The notes beneath the pieces are model-generated. The model saw only the letters and a list, made by a program, of their open reading frames with translations. It was not told the DNA's origin and made no database searches. A program made the position numbers and the translations under genes. Of a stretch of DNA of 64,000 nucleotides, positions 21,842 to 43,929 are shown piece after piece. Every line of letters begins with the position of its first letter. Position 1 is the first letter of the stretch. Location: positions 372,001-436,000 of the forward strand of contig BDGG01000017.1 in assembly GCA_001949185.1 (NCBI GenBank), given 5' to 3'. This DNA is from Ramazzottius varieornatus. Lineage: Eukaryota > Animalia > Tardigrada.

Positions 21842-23773
21842 TTAAAAAATATATACTAGGGCTAGAACAGTTAAGAAGGCGTAGGTCGAAGTGTTGGTGG
21901 CATGACGTGGGCGATCTGCAGTCGCTCTAACGTCAAGAAAATCCTCGGCCGAAGATTGATTAGCGCTTTCCGGTGAGGGTGGTTCCAGTTGTGGTGGTAT
22001 GGTCGGTGGGGGACGGGGAAGAGTGGCAGGTTCAATCATGTACGCTGGATTAAAGAAGTGCAACATGAGTGAGTCCAGCGTCCACTCGTTACACCAGTGG
22101 AAATCGCAGACACAGTTCTTCCAGCCGGAAACAAAACATTGTCACTTATGGACCAAAAGCAACAGTTTAGATAAGACATAATTACAGGCAGTGGTTCGGT
22201 CCTGACGGTGAAAGTTTTGATCTCAGTGACTACGATCAGAAAGGGCGGAGCAAAATTGAGTTCAGCAATCACCCATGTTGGCTGTAAAACGACCACAAAA
22301 TGTCCTTATAAAACGGTCAATTTCGTAGTCAGTTAATGTTGGACTAGGTCGATGTACCAGAGGATATTTCGCTATTCCCTAGTATCGTGTTGTTGGCCTG
22401 ATCAGTTCTCTGCCTTGTCTGATCCAAACCATTCAGTGCCTGCGGCAATAAATTTTGTCTGATACCAACCTGTACTTGATGTCCTCCGTTTTCCACAATC
22501 CTTTTGGAGCATCCGTTTTCGAAAAAAAGCCAAGCCTGTAGATGGAGAGCTCTGGGTTCCCACTGGAAGTAGTTGCCCGAATCCCAATACCGATTTCGCA
22601 TCAATTCAGTCTTGATGCATCCTCGGGATAGCTGATCTATAGGACAGCCCATGACAGCCCAACAGGCCAGGAAATGACCTAGCTATAAAGTTTTGGGGTC
22701 CAACACTGCCCTTACAGGTTTTGCCATCATGCAACTTGGCCAGCTCCGTACCGCAGCGCTCTCCCATCGGCGTGACGGCGACCCAAGTGTAAGACTCGCA
22801 CCTTTCGCGGTTCATGCCGCTCATGGTCTGGACGAACAAGTCCCGCGCATCTTCTTTATACTCCATGGCGCAAGCCTCGTTACTGACAGCGTAGACCGGG
22901 TCATCGGCAGTCCCCACATGGGAGAACTGCGTCGTGCATTTGAAGCAGTACTCGTTCTCCACTGCGCTTACACAAAACAAAACTATGTGCACTGTTGTAC
23001 AAAAATAATATTGGACTTTTTTCATCAGTGTGTCTACTTCGCTTAGCCTCCAACTTGAAGTCGGAGAGGATGGGGCCACTTGGATAATCTTCGGTACTGA
23101 AGGTAGGGGGCATCAAGCTACTCTCGTAATCGTGGAAACGTTGCTTGAGGCTTGCGTAGGTCCAATCGTTGCACAGGTCGGTTTCGCAGTAACACTTGAT
23201 CCTTTGCGTTTGCGGCTCAGTGCCGGCCCGACGTGGGCTGCAGTTCTCCGTGGCACCGCCAGCTATATATCCACTCAGGCTTTCTCTTGTCCAAAGCCAG
23301 CACGAGCGTGTCACCCCATCTACAAGAGGACAACGACTCTTGCCTCCCTCTTAAGCAAACGTCCAGTCGTAGATTACTCATCACCGACGTGACCGGTTGT
23401 GTTGGTTTCTCCCTTAGTGAGCTTCAAGCCTGGACTTACAGCGAAATCCGTCGGCTGGTAGTACAGTGTCGACATCCGAGTCAGCGCCGATTCGCGTGAA
23501 AAGGACGGTGCAGTACTGCCCCAGCGGGCATATGCTGATATTCTGCGATAGCAGTGTCCGATTAGCGGCGATGCAGTACTTGGAATCAGCTGGTGCTCGT
23601 GCAGTATCCACTTGGTGCTTCTCGTCAACCACGGTCGAACATGAGTAGCACTGTTTGTTCCTGTATGCAATGTCCGACACTTGGTACGGCTCGGCCGAGG
23701 TTTCCCACATCCACATAGCACATGATAAGAGCGCACATAAGACACATTTTCTTGATAGCCTCCATAACACCAT
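21842..23773 (-). CDS. Secreted/GPI-anchored Cys-rich protein with two Ly6/uPAR (three-finger)-like domains, 5 exons
   Basis: Signal peptide; CYSC...CYCETDLCN and CFKC...CVCDFHWCN; Pro-rich stalk; hydrophobic C-terminus YAFLTVLALVYIF. Exons join in frame. The start lies next to the N gap and is uncertain. Confidence 0.7.
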
Positions 23774-23789
23774 TGGGGGGGGGGGGGGC

Positions 23790-23839
23790 NNNNNNNNNNN
23801 NNNNNNNNNNNNNNNNNNNNNNNNNNNNNNNNNNNNNNN
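23790..23839. other. Assembly gap (50 N) after a poly-G run
   Basis: N run in the sequence. Confidence 1.
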
Positions 23840-24220
23840 GTGCAGTATCACACACGGTTAGCCCAGCGTGTCATTGATTACCTGTTTATTTACTCATGGC
23901 GCAAATCTGTTTGACTGATCGATAGCTGACCGTTGATTGGCCGGTCTGCCGCGTGCTCACTACCCGGGACGGATTCACGCGTACGACTGTGTGAAGGATC
24001 GTACATACTGAGAATCAGAGATCCTATCATTTGATCTTTCCTCGCAGCGAGATGATCGAAAGCTGATCTTAACTTTAACTTTCTAAAACGGCCAAGTTGA
24101 CCCGCCTCGCGAATTAAGAACTATGGCCGTAAAAGAATCCATAAAAAATGTTGGATGGGTTGGCCAGGAGGCTAAAAGTACCACCCATTGGTAGATGAAA
24201 CAGAGCTTAGTCTGGCCCTG

Positions 24221-32379: not shown

Positions 32380-35300
32380 TTAAGGGTGCGGCAAGTTGTG
32401 GGCGTGTGGTGCTGCAGCGGGCTGGTTGGTGACGACGATGCGCTCGTCGCGCTGGACCGTCACGTGCTCGCCGGTGGGGTGTCCAGCGCCATGGCCTCCT
32501 CCTTGCTGGCTCAAGTGCACGTTAACTTCGCTGTGCTGCACCTGTTGTCCACCGTGTCCTTGTCCATGCTGTCCGCCATGCTGCTGATGGGCCTGCACCG
32601 AGTGAAGGTGACCCTGAGCCTGGTTCAGACCATGCTGAACGTTGGCGTGGGCACTGTCCGCTGCCTCCCGTCCGGCATCTACAACCACAAACAACAATGC
32701 CAGATGAGTATACGCTGAACATACTACAACAGCATCTCCAGAGATACCATCAGCTCGGCCCAACAAAAGACCGCTCTTGTCAACCCGCTCCAAAACCTTT
32801 CAGAACACCATACTTTCACAACGTGTAAAGCAATGATCAAAGCATGGCTCTGACTGATGCTTTTCCATCGAGACATGTGTTTCAATCTTGCATGTCTGAA
32901 GGTCTCACTTCTGACTTCTACAGTGCAGGCGAAAATTAACCGTCGATAACGGGCGTAACGCTCGAGCTGGGTCTAACCAATGACCGCTACAGCTTGGTAC
33001 ATGAGGATTTCATTGGCTTCATCCATCTGGCTCCATCCAACACCCATTTTCGACGGTTAATTTTCGCGTGCACTGTAGAATTCAGAAGTGAGACCTTCAG
33101 ACATGCAAGATTGAGGACTTACTTATAGCTCCCTGTGCCACCTCTTTCGACTTGCGATCAGCGGCGTCCTTGACTTGTTCCACCTTCTGGCCTGCGACGT
33201 GTGCGGCGTGCTGGGCCTGATCCGCCACGGCGTCTTTAGCCTCACCAATCTTCTGGCCAGCCACATGCGCCGCATGCTGGGCCTCGTGCTTGACTTCTTG
33301 GGCCTTGTCGGCCACGGCATCCTTGGCTTGATCCATCTTCTGTCCGGCCACCTGCGCAGCCTGCTCTACCTGCAAAGAGATGGTAACTCCTGTCAGAACC
33401 ACCCTGTTCCAACTCCCCCAACAGACTAGACTTTGACCAGTTTAACCCAACATGTCAACACATGTCTGAGTTCCCAAAACCGAAAACAAACATGTATTCG
33501 TCACACTATACGTACATGCAAACGCATGTTTAATCACAACTTTCCAGCCTGCGTTCGATGGAACTGACCTTCTGTCCAGCAGCGTTGGCTGCGTCTTTGA
33601 CATCTTCCTTGGCGCTTTCGGTGGCTTGTATGGCCGTCTGCTTGGCATGTTCAAAGGCGTCTTGGGCAGCATGTGCAGCGTTGACGGCGGTATCGGCCAC
33701 AACGTGGGCAGCACTAGCCGCCGTGTCAGCCACGACGTGTCCCACCGCTGCGGCCTTATCCGCCACAACGTGGGCAGCGCTGACGGTGGTATCCGCTACC
33801 ACGTGTCCCACCACCGCCGCCTTATCCGCCACGATATGGGCAGCATTGGCAGCGGTCTCGGCCACGACATGACCAGCATTGACGGCTACATCGTGGGCTA
33901 CGTGAGCCGCTTGTGCGGCATAGTCGACGGCCACGTCCTTGGCGGCCACGGCAGCTCCAGCAACGGTCAGCGCGGCGTTGGCGGCCATATCACCGGCCAC
34001 ATGCGCTGCGTGCACCACGTTGTCCTTGGCGGCCACTGCGGCCCCAACTGCCATATCCTTGGCTGCTACAGCACTAGAAAGATAGACAATAAACATCAAA
34101 AAACCATCAAAATCATCTTGAGGACGATTCACAAAGGAAAACCAGAGCCCTCACAGACTTGCACACTCATCCCAACTACTCCTACTAAAATGCGCAAGTA
34201 TGCAGGTGCATGCGAGATGTATCCGATCCACAGCACCCACTTCGCGCACCTACATGCGCAGGTATGCAGGCGGGTGAAATGATGGCTGGCTTTTGGGTTG
34301 TTTAAGCAAAAATTTCCCAGAAAATTCAAACGAGTATATTATCCAATTACTGTTATCGAGCGTTTTGGTTGAAGAGTCTTTACCTGTCGTGTACGACGCC
34401 AGCGACGTATCCGGCAGCTCCGACGGTGGCAGTTCCGACTTCGGCCGCCTTGTCAGCTGTGGCATCCGCTGCGGCGGAGAGGTTCTGCTTGGCAGCGTGC
34501 GCGGCATCAGTAGCTCCTTCCTTCACCTGCTCCGTCGTCTGTTGGACCGTCACTTTGGCATCGTGTGCGACATCTGCGGCCTTGTCCCTCAGGTCCGAGG
34601 CAGCCTGCTGGCCTTTCTGTTTGCCCTCCTCAAAGGCCTTGCTGGCTGCATCAGCAGTCTCCGACACCTGAAACCAAACATTCACATTCAACACCACGCT
34701 CCATTCGCCTCCACGAAATCTCTCAAGCATGCCCAATCTTCCATTTAACTCGACTAGAAATAACCATCAAAGTAAACTTGAGAAGAAAATCACGTAATCA
34801 CGTTGGCAAGAGTAGGCTCAAATTTAATGGCCACACTCACGGCCGTGCCCAGCTTCCTACTCAGGTCTGTGCCCACAGGAAGTCAAGAACAAGGCCGTGA
34901 CAGAGAAGCTGTTACTCAACAGTTGATTGACTTTATTACCTTCTGTGCTGCAGCATCTTTGACTTCAGCAGCTTTGTTGGCCGCGGCGTGGGCAGCATCT
35001 TTGACGTTCTCCGAAGCGTTATGGGCAGCTTGTTTGACGTCTTGGGCCTTGTCTTGGACTTTGTCGGCCACCTCGCTGGCTTTCTGGCCGGCCACGTTGG
35101 CAGCATGCTGTACGGAATCTTTGGCATCGTCAACCTACAAACCAACACAAACAACATGATTATCATGCCTGCACTGTGAACAACATGTCACCTCTGTGCA
35201 AATGTGGGCTTAATGGGTAGCTGTGTGCCACAGACAAGTTTGCGCGACAAACAGATGCGTGTTTGTGAATCTACATGGCCAACATGAACTATCAGTCTTG

Positions 35301-36395
35301 ATGGCATGCCTAGTTTAGTCGCTCCCTCAGGCTGATGCCGTCATTCAACTTTATCATAATACACGCTCGATGCGTAACCTCCAACGAATGTTTCATGGTA
35401 ATCTTCTATCTGACCTCGTTTTGAACATACCAAGCCAGAAATATCGAGAAAGTTCGACTTCCTTCTGTGACCGCCACCAGCACGTAGCCATTGGTCACAC
35501 CGTTACCGCCACCATGTTTAATATTGATTGGTTTGACAGACGGCCATATGAACCATCGCCGAAAGTACAGTGGCCATAAGCAACAGTCAAAATCAAACAC
35601 GGCACCCGTGCACCGCAGAAAATGGTAAGCATGTGACGTAAGCTGGACAGCGCCGTCAACAGAAACGCTTACATCACCGCTTGTTCTCCCCGCAGAAGTT
35701 CTGATCAAAGTGATCTCCTCCACCGTTCAACCCCATTCCTACCACGAAAATCACAGGAGACCTTGTCTTACCTTTTCGGCGACTTTCTGGCCAACTTGGT
35801 GGGCAGTGTGTTCGGCACTCTGCTTGAGATCATGGGCACCTTGCTTGATATCCTGTCCCACTTGATGCGCTTGTTGCTTGACGCCTTCCACCGTTTGTCT
35901 TCCAGCATCGGCTGCTTGATCAAGCTTCCTGGCTGCTGCGTCGCCTACTTCGTTGGCCTTGATGGAAGCAGCTTGGGCCGCGTGGTGAGCTGCGGTACTG
36001 GCTTCACCCTGTAACAGCCAAAAATATTTAGCAAACCACAGATCTCAGTTCGGAATCAATCAAGGGAGCACTCGAGTAGTTAGTGGAACCATAAATCTGG
36101 CAGGGCATAAGGTTGCTCCGTCCATGTGGTGTAGCAGCAATTTCACGCCCTTACGGCTCTCCAAATAGCTGGTAATTTGGGAATTTACCTTGGCTTGATC
36201 CCATTTCTGCTCGGCATGAGCTCCGCCGACGTGTCCTCCACTGCCGACGTGTCCTCCTTGAACATGAGCCCCGGCTACGTGTCCTGCTTGACCGTGTGCC
36301 CCAGGCTGACTGAGATGAATTTCGGTGTGGCTAACTTGTGTACGTTGTTGGAAACCCTGGTCTCCATGAGGATGCTGTTGGTTGTGATCGGCCAT
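32380..36395 (-). CDS. Large LEA group-3-like 11-mer repeat protein, 657 aa, 7 exons
   Basis: Exons 36395-36189, 36008-35772, 35134-34940, 34667-34384, 34073-33569, 33369-33123, 32678-32380 give an open 1974-nt CDS with all GT-AG junctions. A/K/D/Q/H-rich amphipathic repeats (AKDAVADKAQE). No Cys and no signal peptide. Confidence 0.88.
32919..33077. mobile_element. MITE family A, copy 3 (in LEA intron 6)
   Basis: tacagtgcaggcgaaaattaaccgt...acggttaattttcgcgtgcactgta. Confidence 0.8.
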
Positions 36396-37727: not shown

Positions 37728-38538
37728 TTATGCCTTGGCGCCACTAGTTTGCTGCCTTTTCAACACTTTAACCTTCCGTTTTTCAACGTCGGGAATTCCT
37801 TCTCGGAAACCATTCCTGTAACCAGAAACTGAAATTAGTAAGCGCAGGCGCAACAGACATGATGCCACAACGCACTTCCGATTGCTCGACCACGACGACC
37901 AAGAAATGTGCGCTACTGTAAACCCCACACTCGCAATTACCAAACTATAACGTCACGATGCAAGGGTGATAACCTCTTAATGCCCGTGACGTTATAACTA
38001 CTGTTTCACACCGTCTTGCACCACAAACGCAGGAAACCATTCAAATCGATCAACTCGACTTTCATCGCATCAGAATCTAAGAAAAACGACTCTTCTCCTC
38101 GAAGCTGCTTGATCTTTGGTGCATCTTTCCCTAGTTTCTCGCCTGGCCCGGAGCACATGAACTGGAGAAGGCCAGGGAACTTACTTGAAACGAGCGTAGA
38201 CGGTTTTAAGATGGGCTATCCTGCCAGTTCCGGTCGTCCGTCGTCTCTTGGCTTTCACCGACCAGTTATCTACAACGACCCAACACACTCTGGATGTTGC
38301 TCCCTTTGGGGTTTACGGCAAGTTACTATGCACTTACATGAGCGGGTTCTGACGTTGGGATAACCACAGGAGGCGCAAAGGTGTTTCTGGATGTGATAGC
38401 TGGACTTTCCACACCTGCGGCACAGCGTGTGCGTCTTATTGTGCCGTTTACCAAAACTGGACGTTCCTTTCGTCTGCAAGCACACAAGCTCAGGTTATTA
38501 CAGCTCTTTCCCTGCGAAGCACGATCCCAACTCACCAT
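37728..38538 (-). CDS. RPL37: 60S ribosomal protein L37, 4 exons
   Basis: ATG|[39 protein letters not shown]...[17 protein letters not shown]...FK|NGFREG. Confidence 0.97.
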
Positions 38539-42920: not shown

Positions 42921-43929
42921 TTACAAGTGTTGTCGGTGGGGAGGCACTTCCGTCTGGATGTCCGAGGCGTCCTGTAACAGAAATCACCAAACGAGATGTA
43001 CACGAAACATCTCTAACACCTCTGGAACTTACCGGTGAGGAGGTGTCGATGAGCTGTTCGTCCAAATTGCTTGTCCGGTCTCCAGCATGGGCAGTGGCCA
43101 TGTGTGTCATGGTATCCTTGGCGCCTTGCGCGGCGTTGGAGACTGTCTCCTTTACACTCTGAGCAGCATGAGAAACGGCATCCTTGGCTTGCTCCAAGTA
43201 CGATGCTCCGCTAGTCTTTGCATCATCAGCGGCAGAGGAAGCCTGCGAAAGACACCAAACACCTTGCCTCACAAATTCGCACACGCCGAGTACACGTATG
43301 ATGGAAAATTATGGGACACTAAAAGCTATGGGACAGGCGGGAAGGGGGCCAAAATGGAAATTCAACCGTAGAAAAGTGTCGGAAACTGTGAATCGGTCGC
43401 GTACATACGTGCTTCCGTACCGCCGTAGCGAAAAGACCTGTCCCATAATTTTTAGCTATCCCCTAATTTCCTATCGTACGTGTACGACAGTACGAGAACA
43501 CGCAGACAAGTGTACCCATGCGCACGACGCGAACTATTCATACTTCGCATAAAACAAACCAGCGCGCATCGCGCACATGCGTAAACGTTAAAGGGCGATG
43601 TACATCGACAGATGGACGTTTCCGGTTTCACCATACTCCCAGACATCTCTCACCTTGTCGGAAGCTGAGCTCGCAGCGTTACGGGCAGAATCGGAAGCCG
43701 AGTAAGCAGTATCTTTTGCAGCGTCCTTCAGTTCTCCAGCTTTCATGGAAGCGGCATCCTTGGCGTCTTTGACAGCTGCTGCACCTTCAGCCTACATTAC
43801 CAGCACAACAATATATAATTGATTGGTTGAACACATGCACGTCACATTCGCCACAAGTCGGATTCTTGCGTCTTCAGCTCGATTCTCTGCACTTACCTTT
43901 GCTTGATCCCACTTCTGTTCAGCGGACAT
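42921..43929 (-). CDS. Small LEA group-3-like protein, 143 aa, 4 exons
   Basis: Exons 43929-43897, 43791-43654, 43242-43033, 42971-42921, all phase 0: MSAEQKWDQAK|AEGAAAVKDAKDAASMKAGELKDAAKD...|...YLEQAKDAVSHAAQSVKETVSNAAQGAKD. Confidence 0.85.

What the first reader, a model, noticed from the sequence alone, without database searches (positions are those of the whole stretch)
32380..36395. Giant LEA-like protein with matching His/Gly-rich caps resembling CAHS termini (dumbbell architecture)
Seen: a 657-aa spliced ORF with a ~500-aa helical 11-mer core. Both ends carry a similar motif: N-cap QRTQVSHTEIHLSQPGAHGQAGH, C-cap QQVQHSEVNVHLSQQGGGHGAGH. The C-cap continues EHVTVQRDERIVVTN, an alternating beta-prone pattern. 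Recalled from memory and needing verification: tardigrade CAHS N-termini contain segments like ERNEKVVVNN and QQVEHTEFTHTEV, and CAHS gels form through beta-prone termini flanking a helical linker. Inference: this may be a LEA core with CAHS-like sticky ends, a candidate gel- or filament-forming desiccation protectant. The many His could give pH or metal sensitivity.
Basis: partly seen in the sequence, partly recalled or inferred. Interest (0 to 1): 0.82.

Follow-up and report, generated by a model that had tools for sequence, protein, structure and literature searches.

The report
Tardigrade LEA protein with twin ends
This is a real, already catalogued drying-tolerance (LEA-type) protein gene of the tardigrade Ramazzottius varieornatus whose two histidine-rich ends do resemble each other. 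The proposed kinship of those ends with the tardigrade CAHS gel proteins does not hold up beyond composition and one short motif.

Summary
A seven-exon, all GT-AG gene on the minus strand (36395..32380) encodes 657 aa (calculated 66.36 kDa). It has about 490 aa of 11-residue amphipathic repeats between His/Gly/Gln-rich ends.

The two end motifs are alike beyond composition: Smith-Waterman (SW) score 68 against 29±6 for shuffles, and P=0.001 with local shuffles.

Length, mass and gene order identify it as RvY_18026. That protein is annotated in the LEA family and was detected by 26 peptides among the proteins that precipitate reversibly in trifluoroethanol (PMC9592077, S1/S2 Data).

The CAHS link is weak:
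- A profile of the CAHS3-type N-terminal segment scores the C-cap at noise (2.2 bits, E=13).
- Composition-corrected BLAST gives E of 0.2 or worse.
- Only the C-cap against one CAHS N-terminus beats shuffles (family-wise P≈0.01).
- The cap motif occurs nowhere else in the genome.

A 143-aa tandem paralog (RvY_18030) shares the exon-1 end and exon 2 but has no caps, so the caps are add-ons to an LEA gene.

Most likely function: a histidine-rich LEA-type conditional helix that condenses on drying, with charge flipping between pH 7.5 and 6. Gel formation is untested.

No ortholog sequences could be fetched, so cap conservation is open. The scan had notes on neighbouring genes in this window, but no follow-up of this gene.

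The parts
32380..36395 (-). Whole gene: 7 exons, 657 aa. Identified as RvY_18026 of Ramazzottius varieornatus (G000:C17:404380-408395).
   Evidence: Splice sites. Residue counts give 657 aa and 66.36 kDa. RvY_18026.1 is listed as 657 aa, 66.3 kDa, pI 6.61. The neighbour model of 143 aa matches RvY_18030.1.
36189..36395 (-). Exon 1 (69 aa): hydrophilic His/Gln/Gly-rich N-terminal region with no hydrophobic leader.
   Evidence: It holds 11 His and 13 Gly in 69 aa. No Pfam family was found.
36279..36347 (-). N-cap motif QRTQVSHTEIHLSQPGAHGQAGH (residues 17-39).
   Evidence: It aligns to the C-cap with SW 68, P=0.001 against local shuffles.
36216..36278 (-). Gly-His-Val repeat stretch VAGAHVQGGHVGSGGHVGGAH (residues 40-60).
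   Evidence: Read. The exon-1 hydrophobic-moment peak is at 155 degrees, not helical.
36189..36215 (-). AEQKWDQAK, the last nine residues of exon 1, followed by a phase-0 donor. The same nine residues, after Met-Ser, make up exon 1 of the small paralog RvY_18030.
35772..36008 (-). Exon 2 (79 aa): 11-mer amphipathic repeats. Its start is collinear with exon 2 of RvY_18030.
   Evidence: Moment peak at 99 degrees. SW 61 against the paralog exon 2, z 4.7. Sub-threshold YtxH hit.
34940..35134 (-). Exon 3 (65 aa): 11-mer repeats.
   Evidence: Moment peak at 99 degrees. Sub-threshold LEA_4 (15.7 bits) and YtxH hits.
34384..34667 (-). Exon 4 (94 aa plus 2 nt): 11-mer repeats.
   Evidence: Moment peak at 99 degrees. 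Sub-threshold Apolipoprotein hit. Best match to exon 3 of RvY_18030, z 5.7.
33569..34073 (-). Exon 5 (168 aa): Ala/Val/His-rich 11-mers with consensus [A/G]-H-V-V-A-D-x-A-x-x-A. His sits at position 2 in 9 of 15 repeats and Asp at position 6 in 12 of 15, an i,i+4 spacing.
   Evidence: Register table and 98-degree moment peak. AlphaFold2 on the single sequence gives one helix, residues 2-167, best model mean pLDDT 91.5 and the other four models 67.5-79.2. Nearest ESM Atlas clusters carry LEA_4, phasin, YtxH or perilipin-4-like families at 0.77-0.86, so they are leads only.
33123..33369 (-). Exon 6 (82 aa plus 1 nt): the most canonical LEA-type 11-mers (AKDAVADKAQEVK).
   Evidence: LEA_4 at 28.0 bits, E 2e-6, below the 51.1-bit cut-off. 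It finds generic LEA-type repeat proteins in metagenomes at about 40% identity.
32380..32678 (-). Exon 7 (98 aa plus stop): a helical continuation, then a His/Gln/Gly-rich stretch, the C-cap and the tail.
   Evidence: AlphaFold2 gives a helix at exon residues 2-32 and coil for the rest at pLDDT 45-65. It holds 16 His and 15 Gly in 98 aa.
32479..32547 (-). C-cap motif QQVQHSEVNVHLSQQGGGHGAGH.
   Evidence: The pattern H[ST]E[IV]x(0-2)HLSQ occurs in a coding frame only at the two caps of this gene in the 55.8-Mb genome.
32425..32469 (-). Tail EHVTVQRDERIVVTN with alternating hydrophobic residues: a possible strand-turn-strand.
   Evidence: Read. No strand appears in the AlphaFold2 model, so it is unconfirmed.

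Best explanation
The gene is RvY_18026 of the tardigrade Ramazzottius varieornatus, a cytosolic protein related to group-3 LEA (LEA_4) proteins.

Shown here or in published data:
- It is spliced from seven exons into 657 aa.
- Its roughly 490-aa centre is built of 11-residue repeats with the 98-99 degree amphipathic periodicity of LEA, apolipoprotein and perilipin-type helices.
- It is made as protein.
- It precipitates in 20% trifluoroethanol and redissolves when the solvent is removed.
- Its assigned orthologs in two other genera rise slightly on drying.

Inferred:
- In water the chain is largely disordered. As water is lost, the core folds into very long amphipathic helices that coat or bundle with other molecules.
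- The 56 histidines put the isoelectric point in the physiological range. The calculated net charge goes from about -20 at pH 7.5 to about +18 at pH 6.0, assuming a His pKa of 6.5.
- Mild acidification or metal ions would therefore turn the two near-neutral caps into cationic or chelating stickers. They would also switch on His-Asp i,i+4 pairs in the exon-5 repeats, favouring helix formation and self-association.

Origin of the caps: they are copies of one motif added to the ends of an ordinary LEA gene. The 143-aa tandem paralog RvY_18030 starts at the shared AEQKWDQAK and has no caps. The caps are not derived from CAHS proteins. Any likeness to the CAHS 'helix between sticky ends' design is analogy.
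For: Gene model and sizes.

Identity with RvY_18026.1: it is listed as 657 aa, 66.3 kDa, pI 6.61, IUPred2A 0.66, with 26 unique peptides, 43.5% coverage and 75 PSMs (8th of 336). Its orthologs are HDUJA.g03633 (log2FC +0.89) and PARRI_10081 (+0.31). It is listed in the LEA family (PMC9592077 S1/S2 Data).

Assembly identity: CAHS3 was found at the published Scaffold 13 coordinates.

Periodicity and helix.

LEA-type signals: sub-threshold LEA_4, YtxH and Apolipoprotein hits, LEA_4-bearing Atlas neighbours, and generic LEA repeat proteins found with exon 6.

Caps: alike and unique in the genome.

Paralog without caps.

Charge against pH.

No sequence-level CAHS kinship.
Against: - No single exon reaches the Pfam LEA_4 cut-off. 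The best is 28.0 against 51.1 bits. The whole-protein scan was not run because exons were not to be joined.
- Exon 5 is far less charged than canonical LEA repeats.
- The pH and metal switch and any role of the caps are inference from composition only.
- No ortholog sequence could be retrieved, so it is unknown whether the caps are conserved.
- The C-cap keeps a marginal order-specific similarity to one CAHS N-terminus (family-wise P≈0.01). A distant link or convergence on a shared short motif is therefore not excluded.
- Single-sequence AlphaFold2 helices are weak evidence.
Confidence: 0.7

Rival explanations
1. This is an LEA core carrying CAHS-like beta-prone sticky ends. The protein forms gels or filaments on drying the way CAHS D does: helices bundle and the termini cross-link.
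For: - The two ends are truly alike.
- The tail HVTVQ-RDE-RIVVT alternates like a hairpin.
- The protein is among the reversibly condensing proteins.
- The CAHS D dumbbell and beta-termini model is published.
- The C-cap against the L017 CAHS N-terminus (QHSEVNVHLSQQGG against QHFEKTVITQQQGG) has family-wise P≈0.01.
- CAHS N-termini carry Y[STQ][HR][ST]EV in 8 of 13 loci, close to SHTEI and QHSEV in the caps.
Against: - The profile and composition-corrected tests are at noise.
- The N-cap is no closer to CAHS than to unrelated frames.
- There is no CAHS CR1/CR2 region.
- AlphaFold2 gives coil, not strand, for the cap and tail.
- CAHS D variants with the same terminus at both ends failed to gel.
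- There are no gel data for this protein.
Confidence: 0.15
2. The histidine-rich ends and repeats mainly bind transition metals (Cu, Zn, Ni, Fe). The protein would then act as a metal buffer or antioxidant during drying, as proposed for His-rich plant dehydrins and LEA4 proteins. This comparison rests on my own knowledge, not on a search made here.
For: - The protein has 56 His (8.5%), of which 27 lie in the two terminal exons.
- Runs such as HGGQHGQGHGG, GGGHGAGH and GGHVGSGGHVGG are present.
- HxxH is enriched in the helical core: 5 against 1.6 expected, P=0.013.
Against: - There is no similarity to any metal-binding family in Pfam or the PDB.
- HxxxH and HxH are not enriched.
- Nothing in the data bears on metal binding directly.
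Confidence: 0.2
3. The weakly charged Ala/Val/Thr-rich 11-mer helices coat lipid droplets or membranes, in the manner of perilipin 4, apolipoproteins or phasins. They would not act as a general protein shield or network.
For: - The amphipathic period is 11/3.
- Exon 5 has a low charge density.
- Sub-threshold Apolipoprotein, ApoO and Oleosin hits were found.
- Atlas neighbours include phasin and perilipin-4-like clusters at 0.77-0.79.
Against: All these scores are below the levels at which the tools call them evidence. The LEA_4-bearing clusters score higher (0.86). There are no localisation data.
Confidence: 0.12

Closest known systems
Group 3 LEA proteins (Pfam LEA_4, PF02987), such as nematode AavLEA1, Artemia AfrLEA and tardigrade RvLEAM
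   Same: Tandem 11-residue amphipathic repeats, hydrophilic and predicted disordered, with desolvation-induced condensation. Exon 6 carries AKDAVADKAxEVK-type units that match LEA_4 weakly and retrieve LEA-type repeat proteins. The gene is already listed in the R. varieornatus LEA family of 10 genes.
   Different: No exon passes the LEA_4 cut-off. Ala is 26%, Val 12% and His 8.5%, with few Lys and Glu in exon 5. The repeat is [A/G]HVVAD.A..A instead of a Lys/Glu-rich consensus. The pI is near 6.6. Both ends carry a duplicated His/Gly/Gln-rich motif.
CAHS proteins (CAHS D/CAHS-8 of H. exemplaris; CAHS3 of R. varieornatus)
   Same: A tardigrade protein found in the same reversibly condensing fraction. 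It has a helical middle between non-helical Gln/Gly/His/Ser-rich ends. A short [ST]H[ST]E[VI] element resembles the CAHS N-terminal Y[STQ][HR][ST]EV.
   Different: It has no CR1/CR2 region or 19-mer CAHS motifs. Its repeat is an 11-mer, and it is about three times longer. Profile and composition-corrected comparisons are at noise. Its two ends are alike, whereas CAHS D needs unlike ends to gel.
RvY_18030, the 143-aa LEA paralog 6.5 kb away in the same window
   Same: Exon 1 ends in the identical AEQKWDQAK with the same phase-0 intron. Exon 2 is collinear with the start of exon 2 here. Both are in the LEA family list and in the condensing fraction.
   Different: It has no N-cap (it starts at MSAEQKWDQAK), no C-cap and only about 120 aa of repeats. 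Its H. exemplaris ortholog is induced far more strongly on drying (log2FC 5.5 against 0.9).
Other 11-mer amphipathic-helix proteins (perilipin 4, exchangeable apolipoproteins, alpha-synuclein, phasins)
   Same: The 11/3 helical periodicity, and a long continuous conditional helix with a small-residue, weakly hydrophobic face in exon 5.
   Different: Only sub-threshold or lead-level similarity was found. There is no evidence of lipid association.

Membership tests
LEA group 3 / Pfam LEA_4 (PF02987) | Match to the LEA_4 profile at or above the curated cut-off (51.1 bits for the whole protein) | tested here: inconclusive
   Exon by exon, E6 scores 28.0 bits (E 2e-6) and E3 scores 15.7 bits. The others are not reported. 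The whole spliced protein was not scanned because the joined step was left out. The genome-wide LEA_4 scan found no exon over the cut-off anywhere.
LEA group 3 / Pfam LEA_4 (PF02987) | Tandem 11-residue repeats forming an amphipathic helix | tested here: met
   Autocorrelation peaks at lags 11, 22 and 33. The moment peaks at 98-99 degrees in exons 2-6. AlphaFold2 gives a helix at residues 2-167 of exon 5.
LEA group 3 / Pfam LEA_4 (PF02987) | Hydrophilic, intrinsically disordered in water, and gaining structure or condensing on desolvation | not testable with these tools
   Published data only: IUPred2A 0.66, and recovery in the TFE-precipitated, buffer-resolubilised fraction (PMC9592077 S1 Data). 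No CD or heat-solubility data exist for this protein.
CAHS | Conserved C-terminal region with the two CAHS motifs (CR1/CR2) | tested here: not met
   The CAHS3 C-terminal exon finds 13 loci in the genome, none at C17:404-408 kb. The core repeat here is an 11-mer, not a 19-mer.
CAHS | Conserved N-terminal segment (Y[SQ]RTEV ... SETHV in the CAHS3 group; SYTHTEV in others) | tested here: not met
   A profile of four CAHS3-group segments scores the C-cap frame at 2.2 bits, E=13. SW against shuffles gives P=0.04-0.7. Composition-corrected blastp gives E of 0.2 or worse. The only residue is the C-cap against L017, at family-wise P≈0.01.
CAHS-like 'dumbbell' gel former (functional class, not a sequence family) | Beta-forming terminal regions and concentration-dependent gelation that requires them | not testable with these tools
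   AlphaFold2 gives no strand in the cap or tail, at low confidence. Gelation needs experiment. The CAHS D model comes from PMC10949331.

The most novel reading that the evidence does not exclude
The twin histidine-rich caps are pH- or metal-switched stickers. They would let a 66-kDa LEA-type helix cross-link into a reversible network, giving tardigrades a second, CAHS-independent stress-induced gel or filament system that evolved by capping an ordinary LEA gene.
Probability: 0.15. Interest if true: 0.7.

Novelty: new variant of a known kind. Interest (0 to 1): 0.4.

Why it matters
Tardigrade drying tolerance has been explained mainly through CAHS, SAHS, MAHS and Dsup. The LEA-type proteins of these animals are listed in papers but hardly studied.

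This one is abundant in the reversibly condensing fraction (8th of 336 by spectral count). It has an unusual, histidine-loaded chemistry that puts its charge reversal exactly in the range of cytosolic pH changes.

If the caps do drive assembly, the protein would be a compact natural example of a pH- or metal-gated 'sticker-spacer' protectant, and a useful contrast to CAHS. If they do not, it remains an ordinary lineage-specific LEA paralog.

The check also corrects a tempting but unsupported homology claim.

Tried and rejected
They belong to H. exemplaris CAHS-8.

2. Exon 1 and exon 7 as proteins against the own genome gave self hits only, plus one E=0.1 hit.

3. The cap pattern genome-wide has three extra matches. 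None lies in a coding frame.

4. Big searches with exon 7 found nothing. These were the word search, the 1.84-billion-representative phmmer search (0 hits at E≤1e-3) and the metagenome scan.
   - No self hit appeared anywhere, although the R. varieornatus proteome is in the database (RvY_01350 was returned).
   - Proteins of this window therefore seem to be held back. These blanks say little about orthologs or CAHS.

5. Two routes to orthologs by synteny failed.
   - The open frame around exon 3 of RvY_18030 found nothing.
   - No ortholog locus could therefore be read.

6. The raw SW z-scores of about 5 against CAHS3 and L014 were rejected as evidence. They rest on Gln/Gly-rich low complexity and vanish on the conserved segment and with composition correction.

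7. PDB sequence search of the caps gave only E=0.14 to a Pseudomonas lectin and E=1.5 to PenA, which I take as noise.

8. A DNA-level comparison of the two caps shows no sign of a recent duplication.

9. Papers: no text hit for RvY_18026. A 'histidine-rich' tardigrade cryo-EM preprint was unrelated. No supplements are held for the genome paper.

10. The joined 657-aa sequence was never built or searched. All searches were exon by exon, by reference.
Full report
WHERE THE WINDOW COMES FROM

The window is G000:C17:372001-436000 of a 55.84-Mb assembly in 200 contigs. Earlier notes of the scan name the genome Ramazzottius varieornatus. I checked this independently. A paper places CAHS3 at 'Scaffold 13: 649,624-670,909' (PMC11609603). 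Contig 13 holds a CAHS gene at that place, and its C-terminal exon finds 13 CAHS loci in the genome.

THE OBSERVATION

On the minus strand, seven exons with canonical GT..AG borders join in frame:

- E1 36395-36189
- E2 36008-35772
- E3 35134-34940
- E4 34667-34384
- E5 34073-33569
- E6 33369-33123
- E7 32678-32380

Together they make 1974 nt, which is 657 codons plus a stop. The two split codons read Ser and Asn. Both quoted caps and the tail EHVTVQRDERIVVTN are there letter for letter.

Every search used single exons by reference. Whole-protein figures were obtained by adding residue counts.

THE CORE

Exons 2-6 (489 aa) show clear 11-residue periodicity.

- Residue-identity autocorrelation is 0.286, 0.323 and 0.26 at lags 11, 22 and 33, against 0.07-0.2 elsewhere.
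- The hydrophobic moment peaks at 98-99 degrees in each of the five exons, the value of an 11/3 helix.
- AlphaFold2 without an alignment models exon 5 as one helix, residues 2-167. The best model has mean pLDDT 91.5 and the other four have 67.5-79.2. It also models the first 32 residues of exon 7 as helix.
- Pfam gives only sub-threshold hits: LEA_4 at 28.0 bits for exon 6 and 15.7 for exon 3 (cut-off 51.1), plus YtxH and Apolipoprotein.
- The ESM Atlas neighbours of exon 5 carry LEA_4, phasin, YtxH or perilipin-4-like families at 0.77-0.86. The tool itself calls such scores leads only.
- Exon 6 retrieves two generic LEA-type repeat proteins from metagenomes at about 40% identity.

The composition is unusual for an LEA protein: Ala 25.9%, Val 11.9%, Gln 10.2%, His 8.5%, Gly 8.4%, no Cys and under 1% aromatics. 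Exon 5 repeats [A/G]-H-V-V-A-D-x-A-x-x-A, with His at position 2 in 9 of 15 units and Asp at position 6 in 12 of 15.

THE CAPS

The N-cap (33 aa) and the C-cap region (57 aa) align with an SW score of 68.

- Shuffling the N-cap gives 29.2±5.8, and none of 5000 shuffles reaches 68.
- Shuffling within 8-residue blocks, which keeps local composition, gives 35.1±7.4 (P=0.001).
- The whole terminal exons give SW 82, with P=0.008 (global shuffle) and P=0.017 (local shuffle).

The twin ends are therefore real.

- The pattern H[ST]E[IV]x(0-2)HLSQ occurs in a coding frame only at these two places in the whole genome.
- At the DNA level the two caps show no sign of a recent copy.
- AlphaFold2 gives no regular structure for the cap and tail, at pLDDT 45-65. 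That neither supports nor excludes the proposed strands.

WHAT THE GENE IS

The S1 Data of Tanaka et al. 2022 (PMC9592077) lists RvY_18026.1:

- 657 aa, 66.3 kDa, pI 6.61, IUPred2A 0.66
- Mascot score 2736, 43.5% coverage, 26 unique peptides, 75 PSMs (eighth of 336 proteins)
- orthologs HDUJA.g03633 (log2FC +0.89, FDR 3e-28) and PARRI_10081 (+0.31, FDR 4e-4)

My residue counts give 657 aa and 66.36 kDa.

Their S2 Data places RvY_18026 among ten genes of the LEA family, and among the six found in the 'T-DRYP' fraction. That fraction holds proteins precipitated by 20% trifluoroethanol and redissolved in buffer.

The same list holds RvY_18030.1 (143 aa). The gene at 43929-42924 of this window splices to exactly 143 aa. 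Two lengths, one mass and the spacing of four gene numbers all fit, so I take the identification as secure, although I could not compare sequences directly.

The paper did not study any LEA protein further. I found no paper text that names RvY_18026. The gene is thus catalogued and seen as protein, but not characterised. I found no description of its capped architecture.

ORIGIN OF THE CAPS

RvY_18030 begins MSAEQKWDQAK and then has a phase-0 intron. Exon 1 of the large gene ends in the identical AEQKWDQAK with the same intron phase.

Exon 2 of the small gene aligns collinearly with the start of exon 2 here (SW 61, z 4.7). Its exon 3 aligns best with exon 4 (z 5.7). Its last exon shows no similarity to exon 7.

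The simplest reading is a tandem pair of LEA genes. One of them gained an N-terminal extension of 60 residues, a large expansion of repeats and a new C-terminal region.

THE CAHS QUESTION

- CAHS-8/CAHS D (P0CU50) does contain MERNEKVVVNN and QQQQVEHTEFTHTEVKAP (PMC11524581).
- Sanchez-Martinez et al. 2024 do propose a dumbbell, with beta-prone termini around an amphipathic helical linker (PMC10949331).

I took real CAHS sequences of this genome by reference (L010-L023).

First comparison. Raw local alignments looked promising: exon 7 against the CAHS3 first exon scored 78, with z 5.0. That alignment is carried by Gln/Gly-rich runs.

Against the conserved segment. Taken against the conserved CAHS3-group N-segment alone, the caps give P=0.04-0.7.

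Profile test. A profile of that segment scores the C-cap frame at 2.2 bits, E=13, rank 22 of 1443 frames of the window.

Composition-corrected BLAST. blastp with composition-based statistics gives a best E of 0.2-0.8 in a 66,000-residue database. Antisense frames score much the same. Without the correction, E falls to 1e-4 and only sense frames score, which is the signature of shared composition.

Family-wise test. Over all sense frames of the 13 CAHS loci, one signal is left. The C-cap scores 59 against the N-terminal exon of L017 (QHSEVNVHLSQQGGGHGAGH against QHFEKTVITQQQGGDSSAAHH), P≈0.01 with either shuffle. The N-cap gives P≈0.1.

Control frames. In 112,000 residues of unrelated frames the C-cap reaches only 40, but the N-cap reaches 51, more than it reaches against CAHS.

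Other points:
- CAHS N-termini do share a short element, Y[STQ][HR][ST]EV, in 8 of 13 loci. It resembles SHTEI and QHSEV in the caps.
- The gene has no CAHS C-terminal conserved region.

My verdict is a resemblance in composition and in one short element, possibly convergent, but no demonstrable homology.

One further point from the literature: CAHS D variants carrying the same terminus at both ends did not gel. Like ends are therefore not what that model calls for.

MECHANISM

Shown, or taken from published data:
- The gene model and the protein's presence in the animal.
- Amphipathic 11-mer periodicity.
- Reversible precipitation on desolvation.
- Mild induction of the assigned orthologs on drying.

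Inferred: folding of the core into long helices on water loss, as in LEA proteins.

The histidines add a switch.
- With a His pKa of 6.5, the calculated net charge runs from -19.9 at pH 7.5, through +3.3 at pH 6.5, to +18.5 at pH 6.0.
- Each terminal exon goes from about -1 to between +6 and +9.
- Exons 4 and 5 are the most negative parts at neutral pH.
- Slight acidification would therefore bring the protein through its isoelectric point and make cationic ends face anionic cores. It would also create His(+)-Asp(-) i,i+4 pairs in exon 5.
- Metal chelation by runs such as HGGQHGQGHGG or GGHVGSGGHVGG is equally plausible. HxxH is enriched in the core, 5 against 1.6 expected, P=0.013.

None of this has been measured.

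LIMITS

- The costly searches with exon 7 were blank. They also returned no self hit, although proteins of this species are in the database. Proteins of the window appear to be withheld, so the blanks say little.
- I spent the one representative search on the cap exon. A core exon would have been the better choice for reaching full-length orthologs.
- Whether the caps are conserved in Hypsibius and Paramacrobiotus is therefore unknown. That would be the most telling computation.

VERDICT

The gene is a known catalogue entry of a known kind with an undescribed, somewhat unusual architecture. Interest is moderate.

Noticed in passing
window 32882-33114 (intron 6 of the gene): An inverted repeat with 75-nt arms, 93% complementary and 83 nt apart. 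It belongs to a dispersed MITE-like family with at least 55 matches (205 candidates) across the genome. Two further copies lie in or near this window, at C17:398083 and C17:435215.
   Followed up: partly
window 42924-43929, minus strand: A small LEA paralog that I identify with RvY_18030. It has four exons (43929-43897, 43791-43654, 43242-43033 and 42971-42924, plus the stop) and encodes 143 aa. It starts MSAEQKWDQAK and ends DASDIQTEVPPHRQHL. Its H. exemplaris ortholog HDUJA.g03630 is induced with log2FC 5.5 on drying, according to PMC9592077 S1 Data.
   Followed up: yes
window 38273-38485, minus strand: An exon of a ribosomal protein eL37 gene lies about 2 kb from the LEA gene. It is only 85% identical to the annotated R. 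varieornatus eL37 on scaffold 1 (RvY_01350). It looks intron-containing, with an acceptor before [11 protein letters not shown], so it is probably a second, divergent eL37 copy and not a retrocopy.
   Followed up: partly
window about 23.7-23.85 kb: The ORF at 23414-23851 translates through a run of X. This marks an assembly gap (a run of N) in the window.
   Followed up: no
L015 1-1023, minus strand (G000:C10, about 1,224,200-1,225,219): A 341-residue open frame lies next to a CAHS gene. It is extremely His-rich, with repeated HHGSVSS(T/A)NPHDPHHSAHH units. It may be another histidine-rich disordered protein in a CAHS neighbourhood.
   Followed up: no
L011-L023 (13 CAHS loci): The short element Y[STQ][HR][ST]EV is present near the N-terminus in 8 of 13 CAHS loci. 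The CAHS3 group (L011-L014) shares a longer segment: Y[SQ]RTEV..GGP.IGG.QRTV.VP.G.H ... SETH[VM].
   Followed up: partly
L010 2000-2410, plus strand (G000:C13, about 658.5 kb): Upstream of CAHS3 is a small gene, MSGKEVKYERVEKAHVDGDGNVV...REDQGGEDPGMNFKDKR. Its start resembles the N-region of the long CAHS at L014. Earlier notes of the scan already describe this as a stand-alone CAHS N-module.
   Followed up: no
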